A stretch of 48,747 bases of DNA, the filler included, from Bipalium vagum (Eukaryota), in the NCBI GenBank assembly GCA_037834085.1. It is 2 parts of 2 records of this genome, joined end to end, with 100 filler letters (N's around TTAATTAATTAA, not from the genome) between each part and the next. Parts side by side here need not be neighbours in the genome. Positions count along the whole stretch, not along the records: positions 1 to 19,426 come from JBBMKC010003327.1; 1 more part is not named here. One strand, 5' to 3'. The translations under genes and the position numbers were made by a program. This document shows, piece by piece, positions 1 through 17,100 of the stretch. Under the pieces are notes generated by a model, which was not told the origin of the DNA, did not search any database, and was given only the letters and a program-made list of their open reading frames with translations. Within the stretch, counting starts at the first letter, position 1, and each line of letters starts with the position of its first letter.

Positions 1-1515
1 TTGGATACGCTTCTGGCCACTTAGTAAAGTAGTCACATAAAACAATTATAAATTTGTTTCCCAATATCGTTTCTGGCTACGGCCCCACGACGTCCATTGC
101 CACCATTTCCATTGGGGCTGCAGGAGTTGTAATTGGCTTTAGTAGTACTTTAGATCTTTTTCCTGTTCCTCTCCAGGTTTGACAAATCTTACACGACTGA
201 CACCAATTTCTAATGTCGTGTTCCATTTTTAGCCAAAAATATTTTTTCGTAATTCTCGACAATGTTTTCCTACCCGACAGGTGTCCTATCTATCTATCTT
301 TGCACGGTACCACGTAGCACTGATCTTCACCTCTGATAAAATATAATATTCCCTTCTTCATTTTAAATTTATTTTTTAACTTTTCCCAGTTCTTCATCCA
401 ATCTTCCGGAACATTTCCTTTCATACATCCCTTGATTAACTCAATTTCGTCATCAGCCTTCTGATTGTCTTCTCGTGAATCAATCTTACTTACTCTTCTG
501 ACCACTGCCAATACAGTTTCATCTTCGTCAGTGAACTGCGCATCTTCATGTGATAATTCCTCTTGCCTCATTCTCGATAATGTATCTGCATTGGCATTAG
601 CCCTTCCCTTCTGATACCGAATCTCGATGTCATACTCTTGTAATATTAATGCCCATCGGATAAATCTACTAGCGGTATCTTTATTCTTTAGTAACCATTG
701 TAATGGACTGTGATCAGTGAATAAAATAGTTTTCCGTCCCCACAAGTAGTGCCTGAACTTCTTCACGCAAACACTATCGCCAATGCTTTTTTTTCTATCG
801 TCGAATAATTCATCTCGTGCTTTTTCAGTCCTCTACTAGCGTACGCTATTACGTGGTCTTTTTCCTCCTCCGCCTGTTGGGCCAATACTTCTCCAACCGC
901 ATATCCACTAGCGTCCGTCATTAATAGAAAAGGGTTTGTCATATCTGGGTATCTCAACACTAGTTTTCGAATTAACTGCTCCTTTAATTGTTCGAAAGCC
1001 TTTTGTTGCTCTTCTCCCTATACGAATTTATCTACTTGTTTTTTGATTATATTTACTCGCTTTTCTCGTTTGACTTTTCTCTTTAGCGCTTTACTTTCTC
1101 CTTTTAGCAAATTATTCAACAGTGTCGCTATCTTGGCATAATTTTTGATAAATCTTCTGTAATATCCTGCCAGTCCCAAAAATTCTCTTACCTCCCTTGT
1201 ATTACTGGGAATAGCGAAATTTTCAACTTTCCTCACATTTTCGGGATCTGGTCTAATTCCTGAACCTGATACTATGTGGCCCACATATTCACATTTAGTA
1301 GGTTTTACCTTCAGACCTGCCACTTTCAATCTTTGCAACACCGCTGCTATGTCCTTAATGTGTTCATCACCATTGATAGAAAATATTATGATATCATCCA
1401 AATAGACCATGACATGTTCCACATCAATTAATATCAGATTCATCAATCTCTGAAACGTTGCTGGAACTCCTGTTAACCCAAACGGCATTTTGTTGTAGTG
1501 ATACATTCCAAGACC
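1..1515 (-). mobile_element. Ty3/Gypsy LTR-retrotransposon pol remnant (RT, RNase H, integrase Zn-finger and start of the integrase core), broken by stops and frameshifts
   Basis: ORFs give RT motifs MPFGL..P.TFQR, VYLDDII and FLGLAGYYRRFI; RNase H motifs LMTDASGYAVG, NYSTIEK and FTDHSPL; integrase YFW..M..DI..W..SC..CQ and PMEMVAMDVVGP. The order RT-RH-INT is Gypsy-type. The RT N-terminus is missing beyond about 1515. Confidence 0.95.
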
Positions 1516-1996
1516 ACGTACTACTTTTCCTTTCATAATTAATTTTACAATTACTCTTTCAAGTTTTTCTCTTAGAGTTGGATTTTGAATATTATTCATT
1601 TCATTTCATAATTTTTTTAAACGTTAATCTATATGCGAGTCTGGTCCTGAAAAATTGTGCTCTAGATTTTGTATTTAAATGTTTTTATTTATTATATTTT
1701 GAAATATTTTTGTCACAAAATTCACTATATCCTTTTCAGTAATTTTTGAAAAAGAAAAAAAGATTTTCGTTTTTCATTTTTTAGGAAAAAATTGAATTTT
1801 TAGTTTTAAAAAAAAGTAATGAGAAAGAGAGTTGTGTGTAAAACCAGTCTTTGAGGAGAGGATTTCCAACTTTTTTGTGTCACAATTTACTTTTTTACAA
1901 GTTAATTGTACAATTTTGTTTCTAAATGCAATTTATATTTTTAAAAAAACTATATGAAATAAATAAAATGTTGTGTTTCTTACTTAATTTTCGCAG

Positions 1997-6999: not shown

Positions 7000-7779
7000 A
7001 TCAAAGTTATGAGACAGTTGAAAAAGAAAGGATTTTCCGATATACAATCTGGGACCACTATAAAAACAATTTATGGAGACGGGTTCTGTAAGCAATAAGT
7101 CCCGATCGTCCTTCCCTAAAAAATGAGATGATATGTGCCATTAAAGAGGAAGTGGACTCGCACCCATCACAATCTATCAGTGGCTATCCTTAATCAAATC
7201 CTATGTTCTCCTCAAGTGAATGCACAGTCTTCTGGGGTCAAGTTTTTGATGAAAATGTTAATGGATCCAATTATCTGCCCATGTTTAGCAGCAATGTGGT
7301 GCCATTTCTTAAAAGCAAACGTCGTTTCTGTAAAACTTATTTTCAGTAGGATGAAGCATCAGCCAATTACGTCAAAGCAGTCCGAAATTTTTAAAATAAG
7401 GAATGCCACTCTCACCGGATTGGTCTTATGTGACCTATTTCATGGCCGCCGCGTTCACCAGATTTAAGCCTCTTGACTTTTTCTTATGGGGACATCTCAA
7501 AACTAAGGTTTTTAGTAAGAAACCAAAAGATTTGGAACATATGAAAGCAATTATATCAGAAGAATGTTCTCAAATCTCTCCAGATATGTGTAAAAATGTC
7601 ATGCTGACTTTCGTTAAGCGTTTATTAAAATGTGTCGACATAAATGAACGTCAAAATAGATGTAAAAATAAAATTTTTAACATTTTGGTACTATTTGATA
7701 GTCATTTGAACTTTCTGTTGCTATTTTTCTGAGAATGCGGTGACATTTAAATATCAAGGGACTTTTTTTAAACCATGTA
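7000..7779 (+). mobile_element. Degenerate Tc1/mariner-superfamily transposase, rosa/DD41D-like C-terminus
   Basis: FKPLDFFLWGHLKTKVF..KPKDLEHMKAIISEEC..I...MC..V...F..RL..C. A frameshifted WP..SPD(L) motif lies upstream and a TIR-like end closes with TA near 7779. Confidence 0.8.
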
Positions 7780-7859: not shown

Positions 7860-8156
7860 NNNNNNNNNNNNNNNNNNNNNNNNNNNNNNNNNNNNNNNNN
7901 NNNNNNNNNNNNNNNNNNNNNNNNNNNNNNNNNNNNNNNNNNNNNNNNNNNNNNNNNNNNNNNNNNNNNNNNNNNNNNNNNNNNNNNNNNNNNNNNNNNN
8001 NNNNNNNNNNNNNNNNNNNNNNNNNNNNNNNNNNNNNNNNNNNNNNNNNNNNNNNNNNNNNNNNNNNNNNNNNNNNNNNNNNNNNNNNNNNNNNNNNNNN
8101 NNNNNNNNNNNNNNNNNNNNNNNNNNNNNNNNNNNNNNNNNNNNNNNNNNNNNNNN
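7860..8156. other. Assembly gap (297 N)
   Basis: Run of N. Confidence 1.
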
Positions 8157-8165
8157 TAAATCCCA

Positions 8166-11100
8166 TTATTTTTTATTAGAATTAAAATGCTCCATTAATT
8201 GTTGATGGACGATATTTAATATTTTCCAAATTTCATAATTCTCTGTCTGAAATAAAAACGGAAAATGTTAAAAAGATAATAAAGTTAAAAATTATTATTA
8301 TGTACGAATACAAATTATTATGTACAAAATGTATGTAATTCTTGTAAAAAAATAAAAAAATAATGATATTTAAAAGGAAAACAAATATAATTTGAAAACG
8401 ATCTTTCAAAAAACGCTGCTGTTTTTACATAACAGTTCTAAACCATTTAAAACTTGGTTTTGAAGAATCATTATTCCTTTGAAAGTAGAAACTAATTAAC
8501 CATCGGTGGCCTCAAACTGGTATTCGAAAATATAACGTTCAAAAAGAACAAAAAGTTGAATTCTTCTGAAAAATATGAAAACGTAAGAGGTTTAATTCTA
8601 AGCCCGAGAAATCAGAACAATTTTGATCAAAGTTGTTTAAGGTAAGAAACGAGAGTCATTTAGTCAGACGAACAAGTTAAAATAGGTTCACTTTGACAAT
8701 GGAGATTTTGTGTTTTAAAAAAATACAGATTTTTTCTAATAGATTCTTCGGGACTTTAACTGATTTTATTGTAAATAATAAAGTAAAATAAAACTATTAA
8801 TTTAATCTGGAATAATTTATTTGATAACTCTAACCAATCATAAGTTTCATAATCAAGAATTTAATTGATATTTATTTTAGGTTCATAGACCTTTACAAAT
8901 TCTGATTAAAAATTTTTAAAGAATAGTTATTAGGATTTTTTGTTAGTATTTAGATATTTTTTAATCTATTATTACAGGTCGTCGAGATAAATCCGGAAAA
9001 TTTATAATCTTAATTTTAAGACTCAAATAGTAACCTTATTACAAAAAAGTAGCACATAACTGAATAAAAGTATTTAAATTTTAGGATTATTCGGTAAAAT
9101 TAGCGGTCACAACCGCCTCGAGTTGGAATCAGAATGTGCTGCATCCTTGACATCTTCTACGTTAAATTTAGTCGTTAACTCAACGATGAAATCCATTAAG
9201 GACTTGATTGTTTCATGAGGTTTTGAGTTTGTTTGTGACTCAACTACTTCCAAGAGATAATAATCGAAATGATTACAGTGAGGGCTCAAGGATGGTCATA
9301 AATCAAGGACCAATAGTATGCCAGATTTTGACAAAGACATGCTTGTTTTTCTATCATTAAGAGAAAGAGCAGAGTCTTATTGGACGACATATTTTCTCAC
9401 ACAAACTATGTTATCTACCGGCTATTTAACAATCATATCTAGAACGCATGTATAAGTGTTAGCATCCACTTTGATTAATGTTGGAAAAAATGAGATGGCA
9501 ATACCTGGCCTCTTTCGGTTCCTTAGCTGTTAGATAGTCTTTTTTGAGATTTTCTTTTGGTATTCAATATATCCGTGTGCTTGCTTCGAATACCTTTTCA
9601 CCAACTCATAAACTTGTGTCTTGTAATCAAACAATTCAAATATTTCTTTAGGGTTTTTTCCGGAGTGATTTCAACACTGCTGTTCTTTGATTATATCCAT
9701 GATTAATATTAAATTCCAATTTGATTATTCAATTTTATTGATAAATTAGTTTACTTAAACAAAAATAAATCTATCTTCTTTTAATCTTCTTTTAATATAA
9801 CTGAAAATGTTCCGGATTTAACTTGACAACCCTTTATATTATTTTTGATATCATATTAACCTAGTGTCCTAATTTTAGATCCATTTTTATAAAGGGATCT
9901 AAAGAACCCTTTATAAAAATATCAATTATCAAAATTTAAATTAAAATAAGATGTGTAAATAAATAAAATATTACCATTATTACATATTGGGGATTTTCAT
10001 TTATTTTACTGTTCATTTGTGGATTGTCATTAATAGACTCACACTGCAACGTTTTGCCTGCATTTCGAAGAGAATTAAAAAATAAATTATTATAACAACA
10101 AAATAACTATTCATATATAAATAATTAACTCAAATATAAATAATTATTTGACCAGAAATATTTTTATTAACTACACAACTTATTATATCTCAATTATCTT
10201 CCCAAACAGTGACTACAAAAATTATTATTTTGTAAATAATCAAATAACACATTTCTTCAAAGCTCATTGTCAAATAAAGAAATCACAAGGAACTAATTAA
10301 ATCTATAAATTTCTTTAATGATTATTATGAGAAATAAGCCAAAAATAATATTAGTTCTTTAAAAATACCAAAGAAGTTAATTTAATATTATATGAAAATT
10401 CAATACAAAGTCATTCATATTTTGTTGGTAATCCTTCACTGTGCATTATCATATGATTAGAATGATTTTGACTTCACTGTCACAGTAATTCATCTCAATT
10501 TGCTACTTTCTTATCTACAAATCTATGAAAAAATACAAGTTGTCTTTCTAGTTAGGTCTGCACTCCGACAAAGTCGTTGTCAAAGTACCTTGTCGAATGT
10601 TTATCAATATTTTTTGATTGAAATTATGCTGAGATATTCAATTATCAGAAAGACCACGGACATTTTTTGAATCAGTTTAATTTTATTAATATTAATAAAT
10701 CTTATAAAAGTAAAATTTATTTTTCTACATTAAAAAACAGAAATATATTTCAGAAAAATCACTAATCAATATAATTTAAAAAATGATGATTTCTTATTAG
10801 ATACGGTTCCTATTAATCTGTCAGCAAAATTAAATTTCTGGATGTTGGAATGCGAATAAATAAAGATCTATTTCTTAAAGTGGATTATCAGAGGGTATAA
10901 ATAATTTGGTCCAAAGGTCTTGGTCAAGCCAGATGAAACTCCATTAACAGCATAAGAATTCACCTACAAAAAGTATTATTGTTCGCTTTGTATTATTGGG
11001 ATTATATTACTGGGATTTGTAGTGTTATCAGATTATGAATTTTAAAAAATATCTCTCTCAGTTAGTAGATCTTAAGACCACCATCGATTTTAAGTGATCG

Positions 11101-14100
11101 GGTGGATAGAGCGGAGAGGTTTTGTCTTGCATCATTCAAACGAGAGATTTTCAATTGCCTAATCAATTACCTTATCTCAATTACATAAAAGATAATTAAA
11201 AAGAACGGATCGTATTTTGTTTAATAAGTATTTAAGGTTTTCGTACTCTTCATTTAAAATATGATTGTAAAAATCCACAAGACTTTCTGGATGATCATAA
11301 GGATATACATAATGCATAATACATTATATATATATTGTACATTATCAATTAAGAAGTTACGACTGAAGAAAAGATCAATTGTATTCATGATATAGTAATA
11401 GATAAAAAGCGATTGACCTTGTGTGAAATTTCTCTTGCTATGGACAGGCCATCTGGCAATGTTTTTCATCTTGAAAAAGGAATAGAAAGAAATAGGAATC
11501 TTGAGAAAGAGATAGGTAAGATGGGTGTTCCACTTCTTAATTGAAAAATAAAAAATTCACTGAAATAAAACTTTCTTAGTGATGTCTAGACTATTTGTTC
11601 ACAACTGAATATTGTTATTCTTCAAGGCTGTCACCTTGTTCAAAGCAGATGGAACCCTTACCGGTCCGTACTAATTTTCAAGAAATGTTTGTCTTCTATT
11701 TCACAAATTTCGGTAGTCGTAGCTGTTACTAAAAATCATTTTTTCCAATAATGAAGTAATATGATCCGATCAGTCAATTTTTTGTCTTTCATTTTACAGG
11801 GTTAAATATCGCATCAAAAATAAAACAATAAATTAGCAACTCAAAAAAGATTTATCTTTTCAAGAGTTTCAAAATGATATCAAATATTGCACCGAAAAGT
11901 TTTGAAATAATTAAGCACTGAAACAACTTTAATGTATCACAAAAACTGTAACTTTTGACTAAATCTAAAACAAAACAGATCAATAGTTTTCTTTAAGGAT
12001 AATAATAATTCTCCAAATTCATTTTTTAGATGAAAAATAAAATTTCTATCTTAAATCAGTGTCCCTCAGAACTATTAAAGTCCAAATGAATTTGAAAATT
12101 TGATTATATTGAATAATATTTTTTTTGATGAAATTAGAATATAATTAACGAGCACGAAGTTCAAATAAAGTGATTCTCCATTCAGTAGATTTTTTGTATA
12201 ATACAAAATGTATAATATGTACAACAATGTTATCAAAAAGAGTAAATAAAAACTTTTACTTACCATTATCGATTTTTAGTTTTTCTCTTTTCAATGGAAC
12301 TTTACATTTTGAAGATTTTGAATTGAACTTTTCTAAATGCCTTTTCAAATCCCTGTTTGGAGAAGTGCAACTCACTAACTGAAACTTCGTGGAAGCCAAA
12401 ATGCTGAATGAAATATTTATTTATTTTGATTATTAACCATTTAATTAATTCATTATTAACAGACCAATAAGAGATATTATTAATAATATATTATAATATT
12501 ATAATTATTATTATAATATAATATTATGATATTATTAGAATTATGATATTATAATAATAAAATGAAGTAAAATATCAAATTTAATTAAATTAAAAACGTT
12601 TCATGACATTGTCTTTTTCTAGAGCTCAACCTAAGGTTCGCTTGCTGATTTACATATTCATATTCTGAGACTCAACGTTTTAACTTCAGTCATTTACGAA
12701 AGGTATTTGTACCATGTATGGTTAAAATTAATAGGCTAAAATATATCATAAATTAATAATAATAATAAAAATAAACATAAAATTTGAAAAAAGAAAAATA
12801 AAACAATTTTCAATTACTTTTAAGTTTAAGTAATATCAACTTGTTAATTTTGTACAAAATGTTATCGGGTCCATGGACAATACTCAAATCTCAAAACATG
12901 TAATTAATAACATATCTTAGCTTATAACCGGTTAAAAAAGTATATATATATATTTGTTTCATAAGTAACTGACATTTTTTAAATGAATGATTTATTATTA
13001 AATTTTTAATTCTTGGAATCAATAATTTGTTTATATATTCATCATATCATAAAATATCAGCATGAAAAATTACACAATAAAAGAACGTGTGACAATTGTG
13101 AATTTTATTTTATTGTGAATTTTAAAAAATAAAATAGTCAGTTACTTATGAAACACCCTGTATATATATAAATATAAAATTTTTATCAGTTTCTTGACTT
13201 GAATTCAACACCTGTGCTGATTTTAAGAAACGACATAGTTTAAAATTTTTCTAAACTTTCATGACTCTCACTGATAAAATAATGTTTTAATCCAACTGTT
13301 CATGTATGGGTTGCTTAGTAAAATATCCTTGCATCTTCAGAATTTCCAATTCTAAATATCAACTTTTGAGTCCATAAAAGTCATATTATAAACTCAGTAT
13401 TAGACCAGACTGAATTTATAAAGTAATCATTCCATAATAAATACTAAGATTATCAATTGTTTCTTTATCATTTGTATTTTTTTGTTTTAATTCTCATATA
13501 AGAAATAAAAACTTATATACCTTGAACCACTGCAAACGGATATTCTGAGAAGTACAATTTTTTTTGATGCAGTGGAACACTTGAAGTTCAAAAAGGGGAA
13601 TACCACAGAGAAAATAAAAGGGTTGGATTTGAATGGTATCAACATGGAAATAAACGAATCTTCAGATTTGATATAAAAAACCGAATTCATTTTATCTTCA
13701 ACCGCTTGAATGAAACACAAATTCGAAGAGGAATTACATGGATTGCCGCTGCTATCTCTGTATAATTAATTATATAAATAATAATTAAATATTAAAGATT
13801 ACATTCATCACAAAAATTGATTTTATCCAAGTAAGAATTTCCAATCTTAATATTCAATTATTTTGTGACTATTAGCAACAGTCTCTCAACAGTCACTACT
13901 CAAAATATACCAATTGAGTGACCAACATCAATAAAAATGTGCTACTGCAACTTTAATATAGTGAGAAAGACTATAAAAGGTATCTATAAAGCTACCAAAG
14001 TGTTTAGAACAAAAATATCTTCAATCAATTCACTTTCCATTGGTATGAAAATATTAATATAAAAATATCGTTAAGTGGCAAGGGGTTATTAAATTCGATT

Positions 14101-17100
14101 TTTCTGTGATTTTGAAATATTTTATCTGAAAACCGATATTTTTATATTTCACTTTGATTTACATTGATTTATAAAATATAATATAAAATTTTCCAATAAT
14201 CAGTTAGTTTCTTCAAAAACCATAAATCAAAAAGTATATTATAACAAATATATCAACGTATGATGTATTTTAGCTTATCAAACTTAAGTTTTTATGAATA
14301 AGTTTAATATAAAAGTAAAATATTTAGGTATTATCAGTTAAGATATATATAAAATTCTGATCGGTCAAAGAAGTGATTTTTCAGCTGAAAATCGTTATTA
14401 AACCTTTTATTTTCGTTTTATGGATTGTCTGAGCGGTGTTTTACTTATCCGAATATTTTATATTTACAAACACTGGCTTAAATGAAAATGAAGTCATATC
14501 TGGACAATTAATAATCAATTTTGTATTATCAACCAGATTGGAGATTTATTGGCATTTTCTATTAATTTTGGACAAAACGGATTGCATATATATCATGTAT
14601 ATTATTATATATTAATATTATTGTTTGCACCCTTTTCATGAACATATATTATAATATACAAAATAATAAACATCATATAACTTAAGAATAAAAACTTTCG
14701 AAAATAATTAATACTTGAAAGATTTTAAAGAATAAAAGATAAAAGTACCCTATATAAAGAAAAGATTAATAAAATAACTTTTTAAAAATAAATAAATAAA
14801 AATAATAATTAAAAAAGTTTAAATAATACAGTAAAAAATATAATATTGAAAGCTTGTCAAATTAAGGTTAAAGTATAAATAAGAATCTAATTACAAATTT
14901 TAAACAAAAAATATCATACAAGCCTCTAATAATTTACAAACACATGAGAAATTAAATTATTCTTATTAATAATCTTTTCAAAGAGTATTTTCCTTCTTTT
15001 ATAAACATAAATTTATTGATTAAAAATATACCCATAAACTGGTTCTTCGTTCGTTCCTTTTAACGTGTAAGTATCAAATTTCAGTATTGAATTTGAAGGC
15101 AACATCAAATTTGTTTTAGCTGTTAACTCAATGACGCGACCCTTTTCCACGTAGAGTACGGCATAATTATGATTTGGTAAATGCGTTACCTGTAGATACA
15201 TAAAAATGAGAGAGTACTTTTATTTAATTAATACATGAATCAAGAAATGTTACAATTTTTATAAATTGTTTTAATTTTTGATTGAATAGGACCTCAATAT
15301 TAAAATGTTGTGGTGATTGAATGATGTCTATAGAATGATATCTCTAGTCTTTACCACGAAATATACATGATTTGCATGAAATAAGTATACCATTTTAGCA
15401 AAATAAATATCTTATTTAAATAATTCAATTTACGTTTTTCTAAGAAACATAATTTCCGAAAATTAATGTAAGTTTTTAATTGTTTTAATAAGTTGATTTG
15501 ATCGAATTTAATTTCAGTAAATTCAAATTTTAATAATATTCTCCAATAAAGAATGAGTGCAATTTTTTTTATTGATAGATAAATGGAATCTGTCATATTA
15601 GCCAGGCGGCATTTAGAACACTTGAAATGGAAAAGATACATAAATAAGACTGGGAGAGCACAATGAGGAAGATATTTGAAAAATTCAAAGAGACTGAGAG
15701 TGTTTGCGATTGCTGTTAGTCTGGAAGACCATCAATTGAAGATACAAAAATAGGCGAAATAAGTCAGGTTTATGAAGAAACACCTGAGACTTAACTTCTG
15801 ATAATGAAGTTTGATGTAATTTCAAAACCTGATTTTCACTGTTGATGGAACCTTTTTATTAAATGGATATGTCAAATTTGGGTCATTAAACCTCCTAGAG
15901 AAATTATACCACATTCTTTTTTTGTGTTTCTTTTTGGTGTTAGTCAGTTTTTTTTTCTTGCAATGAAGTTCATAAAATAAAACATATTTTCGTCACCAAT
16001 AGTAATTTGTTATAGGAAACGCTCTATTTTATCTAACAAGCTAAATTTCACCTCTGGGGTCTTGTCTCTCGGTTTTTGTTTATAAGGAACCTATCTCTCT
16101 TTCTTGGTCTTATATTTATTTATCAAAGCATATTGTAAGAAATATCAGAGAATCACTTACTGAATATTTTTGAGATATCCTTAAAATATAATTTTTGTTT
16201 ATTTATTTATTTTTGATTCTATGAATATATTTGGTTGGCAACTAAGTAATTGCATATTTTTGTAATTCAAATGAAAAATATAAATCATAAATTCAAAGTT
16301 TTATTGAATAAAATATTGTCCATTTACGTCGACGACCTTCTGCCATCTTTCAGGAAGCATCATAACTCTTTTTTGCGTTGCATTTTTCCCTTTCATAAAG
16401 TTGAAAAGCAAAATGTAACAAAAATGAATATTTTTGTCTTCACTCAGTTTAAATATTTGAGAAAAAATGCCTTTAAAATGATTGACTTAAACAATGCTTT
16501 ATTAATTATATATCATTAATGTAAAAAAGATAGACTATAAAGTTGTTTTTTTAAAAAGTAAATTTGACCCAAAATCGTTATAAAAAAGTACACAATTCCT
16601 TAGTTGTCAGCCCAATAAATTTTAATAAAAACGAGGGAAACCCGAGAAAATAATACTTACTTTAATGATGTAAAATAAAATTATATTTCGAATCAAAGTA
16701 ATTTAATTATTTTAAACAAATCAATGATAACTGAAAAATTATTATCATAATTTTCATTATTTTCATTATTCAAATTAAAATGTAATAATAAATAATATTA
16801 CATTATTTGTTTCTTTAACTAAATACAAACATAACTGGCAATAATAAATGAACCGGAAGAATATTATTATGTCATGATGCAAAATTATATATATGTAATA
16901 ATATTTAATAGAAATAGAATTTCTTTCAATAATTTTACTATAAAATAAAATTGGAATTGGAATTAATTACCGTGACTGCTTTGGATGGTCTGTCAGCACC
17001 TTTGTAGAAAAATGAATTAGGTGTAGCAAATCCGACATTTAGCCTATTTGAGTGACAAAATGAATGGTAATAATTTAAACAAAAAATCATTAATAATGAA

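What the first reader, a model, noticed from the sequence alone, without database searches (positions are those of the whole stretch)
12264..17043. p53-family protein that appears to have lost its zinc site and several cancer-hotspot residues
Seen: four phase-compatible exons encode a complete DBD-sized domain with no stops. Established: p53 binds Zn via C176/H179/C238/C242 and uses R175, R248, R273, R280 and R282. By-eye alignment: VVRRCPHH becomes EPVYGDSS, losing R175/C176/H179. CNSSCMGGMNRR becomes FLNFKCSTASKK, with one Cys left and Lys at the R248/R249 positions. VRVCACPGRDR becomes LVSCTSPNRDL, so R273->V, C277->S and R282->L while P278/R280/D281 are kept. Inference: a zinc-independent (or re-wired, using the new Cys in NPCNSSSNLC) p53 with altered or lost DNA specificity that can still oligomerise, possibly a natural dominant-negative or neofunctionalised paralog. 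No ORF in the supplied track reveals it.
Basis: partly seen in the sequence, partly recalled or inferred. Interest (0 to 1): 0.85.

Follow-up and report, generated by a model that had tools for sequence, protein, structure and literature searches.

The report
Divergent zinc-site-less p53-like gene
The window holds a real four-exon gene for a very divergent p53-type DNA-binding domain that lacks the usual zinc-binding residues. It belongs to an unnamed gene family otherwise seen only in schistosome blood flukes, and the whole family shares this loss.

Summary
The four minus-strand exons exist as described. They have AG/GT borders, compatible phases, no stops and 202 codons. No exon matches Pfam P53 or any solved p53 by sequence. 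Against the genome's own canonical p53, only the SCxSPxRD motif beats shuffles (z 3.5).

The p53 reading is rescued indirectly:
- Exon C hits only three proteins among 1.8 billion (E 5e-5 to 5e-4), all unnamed schistosomatid proteins. Exon D follows collinearly.
- All four intron positions and phases match the Heterobilharzia americana gene.
- An AlphaFold model of that homologue matches p53 cores first: CEP-1 at Z 11.3, human p53 at Z 9.4-9.7, Foldseek E 4e-6.
- Its language-model neighbours are all PF00870 clusters.

The canonical C176/H179/C238/C242 site cannot be rebuilt. There is no CxxH, and a single Cys sits where p53 has CxxxC. R248/R249 are K/K, R273 is V and R282 is L. C275, P278, R280 and D281 are kept. 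The schistosome relatives show the same pattern, so this is a family trait and not private decay.

Still unsettled: oligomerisation, dominant-negative action, expression, and whether the family equals the published flatworm p53-2. The genome also has one canonical, zinc-ligand-bearing p53.

The parts
16971..17043 (-). Exon A (73 nt). It encodes the first strands and the L1-like KAVT segment. The first base completes a codon begun in an upstream exon that was not identified.
   Evidence: AG/GT borders. Entry phase 2, exit phase 0 and length match the 76-nt H. americana exon. Sequence similarity is not significant.
15032..15189 (-). Exon B (158 nt), from LYVEKGRVIE to EEPVYG. It ends with GG of a split Gly codon.
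   Evidence: Weak collinear similarity: z 2.3, 69 of 2000 shuffles. The split Gly codon GG|A is identical to that of H. americana.
13521..13757 (-). Exon C (237 nt). It covers the L2 remnant, the LCFIQAV strand, FPFLNFKC..KK (the L3 equivalent) and the S9 strand. It contains no His and four Cys.
   Evidence: E 4.9e-5 to 5.3e-4 against 1.8 billion representatives, all hits schistosomatid. z 21. It is the only locus of its kind in the genome.
12264..12403 (-). Exon D (140 nt). It holds the loop-sheet-helix equivalent FQLVSCTSPNRDLKR and a basic tail. The donor is G|GTAAGT in phase 1; if unspliced, translation would stop at 12258-12256.
   Evidence: BLASTP E 4e-7 to P0003 residues 495-518, collinear after exon C. 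z 11.6. z 3.5 against the canonical p53 exon of the same genome.
11177..11317 (-). Unverified candidate C-terminal ORF (HYVYPYD...ILNEEYENL...stop). From the AG at 11288-11287 it would join exon D in frame (exon 11286-11177), but that would leave out its strand-like start.
   Evidence: Phase compatibility read. No significant similarity to the schistosome C-terminus. Homotetramer prediction gave no verdict. It is listed only so that it can be tested.

Best explanation
The locus is a single-copy, apparently intact gene of a flatworm. It is the orthologue of a fast-evolving, so far unnamed gene family found in schistosomatid blood flukes (Heterobilharzia and Schistosoma; database name 'unnamed protein product').

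The family's roughly 200-residue core is a p53-type beta-sandwich DNA-binding domain. It keeps the loop-sheet-helix signature: F270, C275, P278, R280, D281 and a basic residue at 283. It also keeps a basic pair where p53 has R248/R249.

Its L2/L3 region is rebuilt. There is no CxxH, and a single Cys replaces CxxxC. R175, R273 and R282 are also absent.

Inferred, not shown: it is a nuclear, sequence-specific DNA-binding factor. It would read the major groove through the conserved helix Arg (R280 equivalent) and hold its L3 loop without the canonical zinc site. That could mean no metal at all, or the two family-conserved Cys (LCFIQAV and xKC) plus lineage-specific ligands.

The genome keeps a separate canonical p53 with all zinc ligands, so this gene is a neofunctionalised paralogue and not the organism's only p53. 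Whether the family is the published flatworm 'p53-2' or a third, unrecognised paralogue is not settled.
For: - The exon model and its conservation with the H. americana gene.
- The only relatives among 1.8 billion representatives are three schistosomatid proteins. A word-indexed search from the schistosome side also finds only schistosomatids.
- The AF2 model of the homologue has core strands and the terminal helix at pLDDT 60-86.
- Foldseek against PDB: the top 50 are all p53 or CEP-1 cores, E about 4e-6.
- The search independent of Foldseek (VIA-align 2): CEP-1 Z 11.3 over 171 residues, human p53 Z 9.4-9.7, then CP2c 7.9 and Grhl2 6.8.
- ESM Atlas by shape gives p73/p53/p63 clusters first.
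- Language-model features give all ten best family-bearing hits as PF00870, at 0.90-0.91 with 198-203 of 256 shared features.
- Residues conserved between the window and the schistosomes fall on the DNA-binding face: C288, FPFLN, K332, C333, K338, K339, F360, C365, P368, R370, D371 and R374 in P0001 numbering.
- The core is better conserved than the flanks in schistosomatids: 74% against about 55-57% overall.
- The gene is single copy.
- A canonical p53 exon with RCPKH, CYNSC and GGRK, followed by an exon with RSCACPSRD, lies elsewhere in the genome.
- Flatworm source: all five AAA codons in a COX1 contig of the assembly sit at conserved Asn sites.
Against: - No exon and no schistosome member reaches Pfam P53 even at E 10.
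- A profile of the family finds no p53 in the PDB.
- hhalign against the canonical exon finds nothing.
- The fold evidence comes from a homologue, from a shallow 10-row alignment and from a model with mean pLDDT 43.6. The L2 and L3 equivalents are below 50, so nothing can be said about their geometry.
- The joined window protein was not searched or folded.
- There is no RNA evidence: the only run holding the stretch covers the introns too, and its kind is not on record.
- The 5' end and the C-terminus of the gene are not defined.
- DNA binding, metal content and function are untested.
Confidence: 0.75

Rival explanations
1. It is simply the orthologue of the already published parasite-specific flatworm p53-2 (S. 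mansoni Smp_136160). That gene mediates the genotoxic stress response. If so, the gene is known and only the zinc-ligand observation is new.
For: - Wendt et al. 2022 (PMC9478680) describe a second, very divergent p53 paralogue. It was grouped apart from canonical p53 and found only in trematodes and cestodes.
- The PF00870 scan of this genome finds one canonical locus only. One canonical gene plus this gene would equal the two genes expected in a parasitic flatworm.
- In Mesocestoides, the second p53-like gene carries only superfamily-level InterPro entries.
Against: - The paper states that Smp_136160 has a Pfam PF00870 domain and InterPro IPR002117.
- None of seven schistosomatid members of this family gives any PF00870 hit, including one from S. 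rodhaini. All are named 'uncharacterized' or 'unnamed'.
- No trematode outside Schistosomatidae and no cestode was hit.
Confidence: 0.4
2. It is a decaying or silent paralogue, i.e. a pseudogene in the making. The loss of zinc ligands and hotspot arginines would then be neutral erosion.
For: - No RNA run holds it.
- The N-terminal and C-terminal exons could not be identified.
- The schistosome linker and C-terminal motif have no clear counterpart.
- The introns carry transposon debris.
Against: - There are 202 codons without a stop in DNA of about 25% G+C.
- All splice sites are canonical.
- Four intron positions and phases are conserved with a distant relative.
- The same 'losses' are fixed across schistosomatids, while the DNA-face residues stay conserved.
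Confidence: 0.1
3. It is not derived from p53. It would be another Ig-like DNA-binding domain (for example Grainyhead/CP2-like, which naturally lacks zinc), or an unrelated beta-sandwich that AlphaFold and the reader's eye pulled towards p53.
For: - No profile method links it to p53.
- CP2c and Grhl2 also appear in the fold search, at Z 7.9 and 6.8.
- The model confidence is low.
Against: - p53 cores stand above CP2/Grh in both fold searches.
- Language-model neighbours are P53 at 0.90-0.91, against CP2 at 0.80.
- No Pfam CP2 hit.
- The SCxSPxRD motif matches the genome's own p53 better than shuffles do.
- The C|D intron is in phase 2 just before the S10 strand, as TP53 intron 7 is. This comparison rests on established TP53 gene structure and was not tested here.
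Confidence: 0.07
4. One reading: a natural dominant-negative that hetero-oligomerises with the canonical p53 and poisons its DNA binding.
For: Schistosome members end in an EYVIKTKSRRIYRILSLLNRELSRHL stretch that resembles the strand-helix pattern of p53 oligomerisation domains. The window has an ORF with a similar pattern.
Against: - The window ORF is not significantly similar to that stretch.
- From the only usable acceptor it cannot be spliced so as to include its strand-like part.
- The homotetramer prediction gave no verdict.
- Conservation of R280, D281 and the basic pair argues for DNA binding of its own.
Confidence: 0.08

Closest known systems
Unnamed schistosomatid proteins (Heterobilharzia americana CAH8661623.1/CAH8639642.1; Schistosoma guineensis CAH8665746.1; S. 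bovis, S. rodhaini, S. mekongi, S. margrebowiei, S. mattheei members)
   Same: - Collinear similarity over exons B-D, with 38-45% identity in exon C and 50% in the LSH stretch.
- Four identical intron positions and phases.
- The same motifs: LCFIQAV, FPFLNxKC, KK, FxxVSCxSPxRD.
- The same absence of CxxH and CxxxC.
   Different: - The window gene lacks the long low-complexity insert in the core and the ~160-residue Ser/Asn-rich linker.
- It lacks the schistosome Cys of GGIC and carries a new Cys (NPC).
- Its C-terminus is undefined.
- It is far more A+T-rich.
Canonical p53/p63/p73 DNA-binding domain (Pfam PF00870; human p53, C. elegans CEP-1 1T4W)
   Same: - The fold, shown on the homologue.
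- F270, C275, P278, R280 and D281, a basic residue at 283, and a basic pair at 248/249.
- An intron in phase 2 just before strand S10.
   Different: - No Pfam match.
- Zinc ligands C176, H179 and one of C238/C242 are absent.
- R175 is absent, R273 is Val, R282 is Leu, C277 is Ser.
- L2 is shorter and unrelated in sequence.
- CEP-1, itself very divergent, still keeps the zinc site (established knowledge).
Flatworm p53-2 (Smp_136160; Wendt et al. 2022, PMC9478680)
   Same: A divergent second p53 paralogue of parasitic flatworms that coexists with a canonical p53-1. It has no Pfam tetramerisation, TAD or SAM domain.
   Different: p53-2 is reported to carry PF00870 and to occur in all trematodes and most cestodes. 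This family has no PF00870 hit and was found only in schistosomatids plus this genome. Identity was neither shown nor excluded.
Grainyhead/CP2 DNA-binding domain (PF04516)
   Same: A p53-like beta-sandwich DNA-binding fold that works without zinc.
   Different: Lower structural scores (Z 7.9 and 6.8 against 9.4-11.3), no Pfam hit, and no SCxSPxRD-type motif.

Membership tests
p53 family DNA-binding domain (PF00870) | Significant match to the Pfam P53 profile | tested here: not met
   There was no hit for any exon. The window locus was not found in the six-frame PF00870 scan of the genome. None of seven schistosomatid homologues hit at E up to 10.
p53 family DNA-binding domain (PF00870) | p53-core fold: Ig-like beta-sandwich with loop-sheet-helix | tested here: met
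   Tested on the H. americana homologue only. Foldseek's top 50 are all p53 or CEP-1, E about 4e-6. VIA-align 2 gives CEP-1 Z 11.3 and p53 Z 9.4-9.7, above everything else. The atlas shape search agrees. The model is of low to moderate confidence. The joined window protein was not folded.
p53 family DNA-binding domain (PF00870) | Tetrahedral zinc site C176/H179/C238/C242 | tested here: not met
   Exon C has no His and no CxxH. One Cys (FKC) stands where p53 has CxxxC. Depending on the alignment it falls at 238, 242 or 243. The schistosomatids show the same.
p53 family DNA-binding domain (PF00870) | DNA-contact residues R248, R273, R280 (listed in PMC8901663) | tested here: inconclusive
   R280 and D281 are kept. 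R248 is Lys (charge kept). R273 is Val. A possible K120 equivalent in SKAVT depends on an uncertain alignment.
p53 family DNA-binding domain (PF00870) | Loop-sheet-helix signature CxCPxRD | tested here: met
   The window has SCTSPNRD where the genome's own p53 has SCACPSRD. z 3.5, 42 of 5000 shuffles.
p53 family (whole protein) | C-terminal oligomerisation domain | tested here: inconclusive
   There is no Pfam P53_tetramer hit in the homologues. The candidate window ORF is not significantly similar. The complex prediction gave no verdict.
Flatworm p53-2 (Smp_136160) | Reciprocal best hit to Smp_136160 | not testable with these tools
   The sequence is not on hand and the paper's supplements are not held.
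Flatworm p53-2 (Smp_136160) | Carries PF00870 / IPR002117, as stated by Wendt et al. | tested here: not met
   There are no PF00870 hits in the Schistosoma members of this family.
Unnamed schistosomatid p53-fold family (P0001/P0003 group) | Significant collinear sequence similarity and shared gene structure | tested here: met
   E 4.9e-5 in 1.8 billion representatives. Exon D E 4e-7. z 21 and 11.6. Four intron positions and phases shared.
Grainyhead/CP2 DNA-binding domain (PF04516) | Pfam CP2 match or closest structural neighbour | tested here: not met
   No Pfam hit. Z 7.9 and 6.8, below p53. Language-model score 0.80 against 0.90-0.91 for P53.

The most novel reading that the evidence does not exclude
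Blood flukes and this flatworm carry a third p53-fold transcription factor lineage. It would be distinct from p53-1 and p53-2 and invisible to Pfam and InterPro. It would have dispensed with the zinc site that every characterised p53, p63, p73 and CEP-1 domain needs for folding and DNA binding, yet would still bind DNA through the conserved R280-type helix.
Probability: 0.4. Interest if true: 0.72.

Novelty: new variant of a known kind. Interest (0 to 1): 0.55.

Why it matters
Zinc loss is the classic way human p53 misfolds, and several rescue strategies target it. A natural p53-type domain that has been stable for a long evolutionary time without the C-H-C-C site would show how the L2/L3 DNA-binding surface can be held together otherwise.

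For flatworm biology, it would add an unannotated p53-like regulator to schistosomes, which are human pathogens. There, p53-1 controls tegument stem cells and p53-2 controls the radiation response. It would also bear on when these paralogues arose.

If the family turns out to be p53-2 itself, the finding shrinks to two points: a new orthologue outside the sampled schistosomatids, and the observation that p53-2 lacks the zinc ligands.

Tried and rejected
- **Pfam on single exons** and **phmmer of exons B, C and D against the PDB** gave only chance hits: designed repeat proteins, a metallo-beta-lactamase and Radical_SAM_2 at E 0.02.
- **ESM Atlas with exon C** gave nothing usable.
- **Word-indexed protein search with exon C** found no candidates.
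- **Family profile against the PDB** and **hhalign against the canonical exon** found nothing.
- **MAFFT with exon fragments** scattered exons A and B, so exon-wise pairwise tests were used instead.
- **KSRRIY match at 8756-8739** is followed at once by a stop and is taken as chance.
- **Homotetramer prediction of the ORF at 11180-11317** scored 0.06 against a mark of 0.32. It gave no verdict and counts neither for nor against.
- **N-terminal exon** was not identifiable. The ORF at 17934-17710 has a weak collinear hit (E 0.93) but no good phase-2 donor.
- **Sequencing runs:** the only run holding the stretch covers its introns as well; its kind is not on record, and no holder is on record as RNA.
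- **Trematode eggshell family PF08034** was not found in the genome, which is uninformative.
- **SRR33002330** appears in no paper.
- **Supplements for Smp_136160** are not held.
- **Joined spliced protein:** All searches were exon by exon, by reference.


Full report
**Observation.**
- exon A, 17043-16971
- exon B, 15189-15032
- exon C, 13757-13521
- exon D, 12403-12264

The phases fit. Exon A exits in phase 0. B|C splits a Gly codon as GG|A. C|D splits a Ser codon as AG|C. Exon D exits in phase 1 at a strong G|GTAAGT donor. Together they give 608 nt, or 202 whole codons, about the size of a p53 core. The surrounding DNA is about 20-30% G+C, so long open frames are not rare by themselves and needed outside support.

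**Is it p53 by sequence?** Not demonstrably.
- No exon hits Pfam P53 even at E 10.
- A six-frame PF00870 scan of the whole 440-Mb assembly misses this contig. It finds a single other locus, contig C103718.
- That locus is a canonical p53. One exon carries RCPKH, CYNSC and GGRK and aligns to human p53 over its L2-L3 region at E 9e-8. The next exon carries RSCACPSRD.
- phmmer of exons B, C and D against all PDB sequences gives only chance hits.
- Against the genome's own canonical p53 exons, exon C is indistinguishable from shuffles (z 0.4). Only the SCTSPNRD stretch of exon D stands out (z 3.5, 42 of 5000).

**Relatives.** HMMER of exon C against 1.84 billion representative proteins returns just three hits (E 4.9e-5 to 5.3e-4). 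All are 'unnamed protein products' of schistosomatid blood flukes: Heterobilharzia americana, Schistosoma mattheei and S. guineensis, with S. bovis among the cluster members. Further support:
- Exon D matches the same proteins immediately downstream (E 4e-7). Exon B matches weakly upstream.
- Exon-wise shuffle tests against the corresponding H. americana exons give z 21 (C), 11.6 (D) and 2.3 (B). Exon A is not significant.
- Mapping the H. americana protein on its 34-kb gene shows that all four junctions coincide in position and phase. These are entry into exon A (phase 2), A|B (phase 0), B|C (phase 2, the same GG|A Gly codon) and C|D (phase 2). Exon A is 73 nt here and 76 nt there.

No exon is missing between 15032 and 13757, and the relatives have no CxxH there either. 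A profile of the family finds only this locus in the genome, so the gene is single copy.

**Is the family p53-like?**
- None of seven schistosomatid members has any Pfam hit to P53, CEP-1 or CP2. The family profile finds no p53 in the PDB.
- An AlphaFold2 model of the H. americana member was built from a 10-row alignment that included window exons C and D. It is poor overall (mean pLDDT 43.6; long disordered tails). Most core strands and the terminal helix reach pLDDT 60-86.
- Foldseek places p53 cores and CEP-1 in all top 50 ranks (E about 4e-6, TM by target 0.36-0.55).
- The exhaustive aligner, which does not depend on Foldseek, gives CEP-1 Z 11.3 (171 residues, 4.5 A) and human p53 Z 9.4-9.7. 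Next come the p53-like CP2c (7.9) and Grhl2 (6.8), then generic Ig folds.
- The ESM Atlas shape search again lists p73, p53 and p63 clusters first.
- Independently of any structure, the language-model features of residues 170-395 are nearest to PF00870 clusters. Scores are 0.90-0.91 with 198-203 of 256 shared features, and all ten best family-bearing hits are P53. CP2 scores 0.80.
- From established knowledge of TP53 gene structure (not tested here): intron 7 is in phase 2, 14 codons before C275; exon 8 is 137 nt and ends in phase 1; intron 4 is in phase 0 next to T125. The window gene has a phase-2 intron 12 codons before the equivalent Cys, a 140-nt exon D ending in phase 1, and a phase-0 intron after KAVT.

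I take the family to be a genuine but extremely divergent p53-family branch (about 85-90%).

**Zinc site and hotspot residues.** PMC8901663 lists the conserved set: C176, H179, C238 and C242; R248, R273 and R280; R175 and R249.

In the window gene, the loop-sheet-helix aligns without gaps. Here and below, the residue before each arrow is human p53 (position number as given); the residue after it is the window gene.

| p53 position | Change |
|---|---|
| 270 | F kept |
| 273 | R→V |
| 275 | C kept |
| 276 | A→T |
| 277 | C→S |
| 278 | P kept |
| 280 | R kept |
| 281 | D kept |
| 282 | R→L |
| 283 | R→K |

Anchored on strand S9, the KK pair falls on R248/R249. The single L3 Cys (FLNFKC) can be placed in three ways:
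- at 242, with one deletion, which gives N-x-x-C like N239-S-S-C242;
- at 238, ungapped from the LIPF/VVPY anchor (MAFFT's choice).

In every case only one of the two L3 ligands survives. The L2 equivalent is about 23 residues here and 28 in schistosomes. It has no His in the window gene and no CxxH in either.

Only three Cys are conserved between the window and the schistosomes: those in LCFIQAV, xKC and VSC, the last being the C275 equivalent. The window adds one Cys (NPC), and the schistosomes add another (GGIC).

So the canonical site is gone family-wide. A rewired site built on the two conserved L2-end and L3 Cys cannot be excluded. It cannot be assessed here either, because the model is below pLDDT 50 in exactly these loops.

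**What it most likely does.** The residues shared across this deep divergence cluster on the p53 DNA-binding face: the L3 motif, the basic pair, and the helix Arg/Asp. In schistosomatids the core is better conserved (74%) than the protein overall (about 55-57%). That pattern points to a functional DNA-binding factor under constraint, not to erosion.

I infer a transcription factor that reads DNA through the R280-type helix, with an L2/L3 scaffold that no longer depends on the C-H-C-C zinc site. This is inference; nothing here measures binding, metal or expression.

**Oligomerisation is open.**
- Schistosome members end in a strand-helix-like EYVIKTKSRRIYRILSLLNRELSRHL.
- The window has an ORF at 11317-11177 with a comparable pattern. 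An acceptor at 11288-11287 would join exon D in frame, but would drop the strand-like part.
- That ORF is not significantly similar to the schistosome tail, and the tetramer prediction gave no verdict.
- If exon D is not spliced, the protein would end KIDNGK.
- The 5' exon(s) were not found and may lie beyond the contig end.

**Source organism.** The assembly holds a COX1 contig in which all five AAA codons sit at conserved Asn positions (GNW, PRxNNxSFW, DRNFNTSFFD, GVNxTFFP) while AAG sits elsewhere, including the conserved Lys of TGIKVFSW. That is the flatworm/echinoderm mitochondrial code. Together with the schistosomatid-only relatives, it points to a rhabditophoran flatworm outside the sampled schistosomatids. 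Supporting figures are 38-45% identity in exon C, against 60-74% over the core within that family, and a much lower G+C. A second, ordinary-looking COX1 type suggests host or other animal DNA in the sample.

**Relation to the literature.** Wendt et al. 2022 (PMC9478680) describe two schistosome p53 genes, both said to carry PF00870. They are the canonical p53-1 (Smp_139530) and the parasite-specific p53-2 (Smp_136160), which is needed for the genotoxic stress response.
- *Against identity with p53-2:* the present family has no PF00870 hit in any Schistosoma member and is named 'uncharacterized' throughout.
- *For identity:* this genome shows only one PF00870 locus plus this gene, and p53-2 is known to be so divergent that orthology pipelines separate it from canonical p53.

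I could not obtain the Smp_136160 sequence. I put identity with p53-2 at about 40% and a third, unrecognised paralogue at about 40-45%. I found no paper reporting a p53-family domain without the zinc ligands.

**Limits.** The fold evidence is therefore indirect, through a homologue. No RNA data exist for this organism in the index.

**Verdict.** The p53-family reading and the loss of the canonical zinc site are supported, as a conserved family trait. Oligomerisation and dominant-negative action are unsupported. I rate it a new variant of a known kind, of moderate to good interest.

Noticed in passing
G000:C103718:6916-7400 (L001 1307-1824, minus strand): This is the genome's canonical p53-family gene. 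One exon carries RCPKH, CYNSC and GGRK, so all four zinc ligands are present. The next exon carries RSCACPSRD. A 93% identical exon occurs in a Logan contig of run SRR33002330 (P0017), so a close relative has been sequenced.
   Followed up: partly
window 77-1599 (-): A fragment of an LTR-retrotransposon pol gene. It matches RVT_1 (E 8e-17), RT_RNaseH (5e-14) and Integrase_H2C2 (8e-9), and is split over several ORFs.
   Followed up: yes
window 12955-13155: A 201-bp element with 25-nt terminal inverted repeats (92% complementary), flanked by TA-rich sequence. It lies inside the intron between exons C and D and looks like a miniature inverted-repeat transposon.
   Followed up: partly
window 7135-7732 (+) and 9110-9289 (-): Overlapping ORFs of 110, 109 and 60 residues that look transposase-like by eye but have no Pfam match. 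An assembly gap (N run 7860-8156) lies beside them.
   Followed up: partly
G000 contigs C253947, C246471, C253320, C38971, C246095 and others: The assembly gave 19 COX1 matches. At least two are intact flatworm-like types. One is of a different, ordinary invertebrate type (MPRRYSDYPD). Several copies are riddled with TAA and TAG stops, like nuclear mitochondrial insertions. The sample is probably mixed, for example parasite plus host.
   Followed up: partly
P0002, P0012, P0015 (schistosome database proteins): Several public gene models of this family look wrong. The S. mattheei model P0002 has its C-terminal part before the core. P0012 is named CRAL-TRIO domain-containing by UniRef, possibly fused to a neighbouring gene, and has an inserted stretch that looks like retained intron. 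P0015 is chimeric. H. americana has a short model (468 aa) and a long one (739 aa).
   Followed up: no
window 12264-12360 and P0003 678-711: The basic tail of exon D (…KFNSKSSKCKVPLKREKLKIDNG) resembles the schistosome segment just before their C-terminal motif (E 0.1), not the segment just after their core. The window gene may therefore lack the ~160-residue low-complexity linker. The exon border there is not conserved with H. americana.
   Followed up: partly
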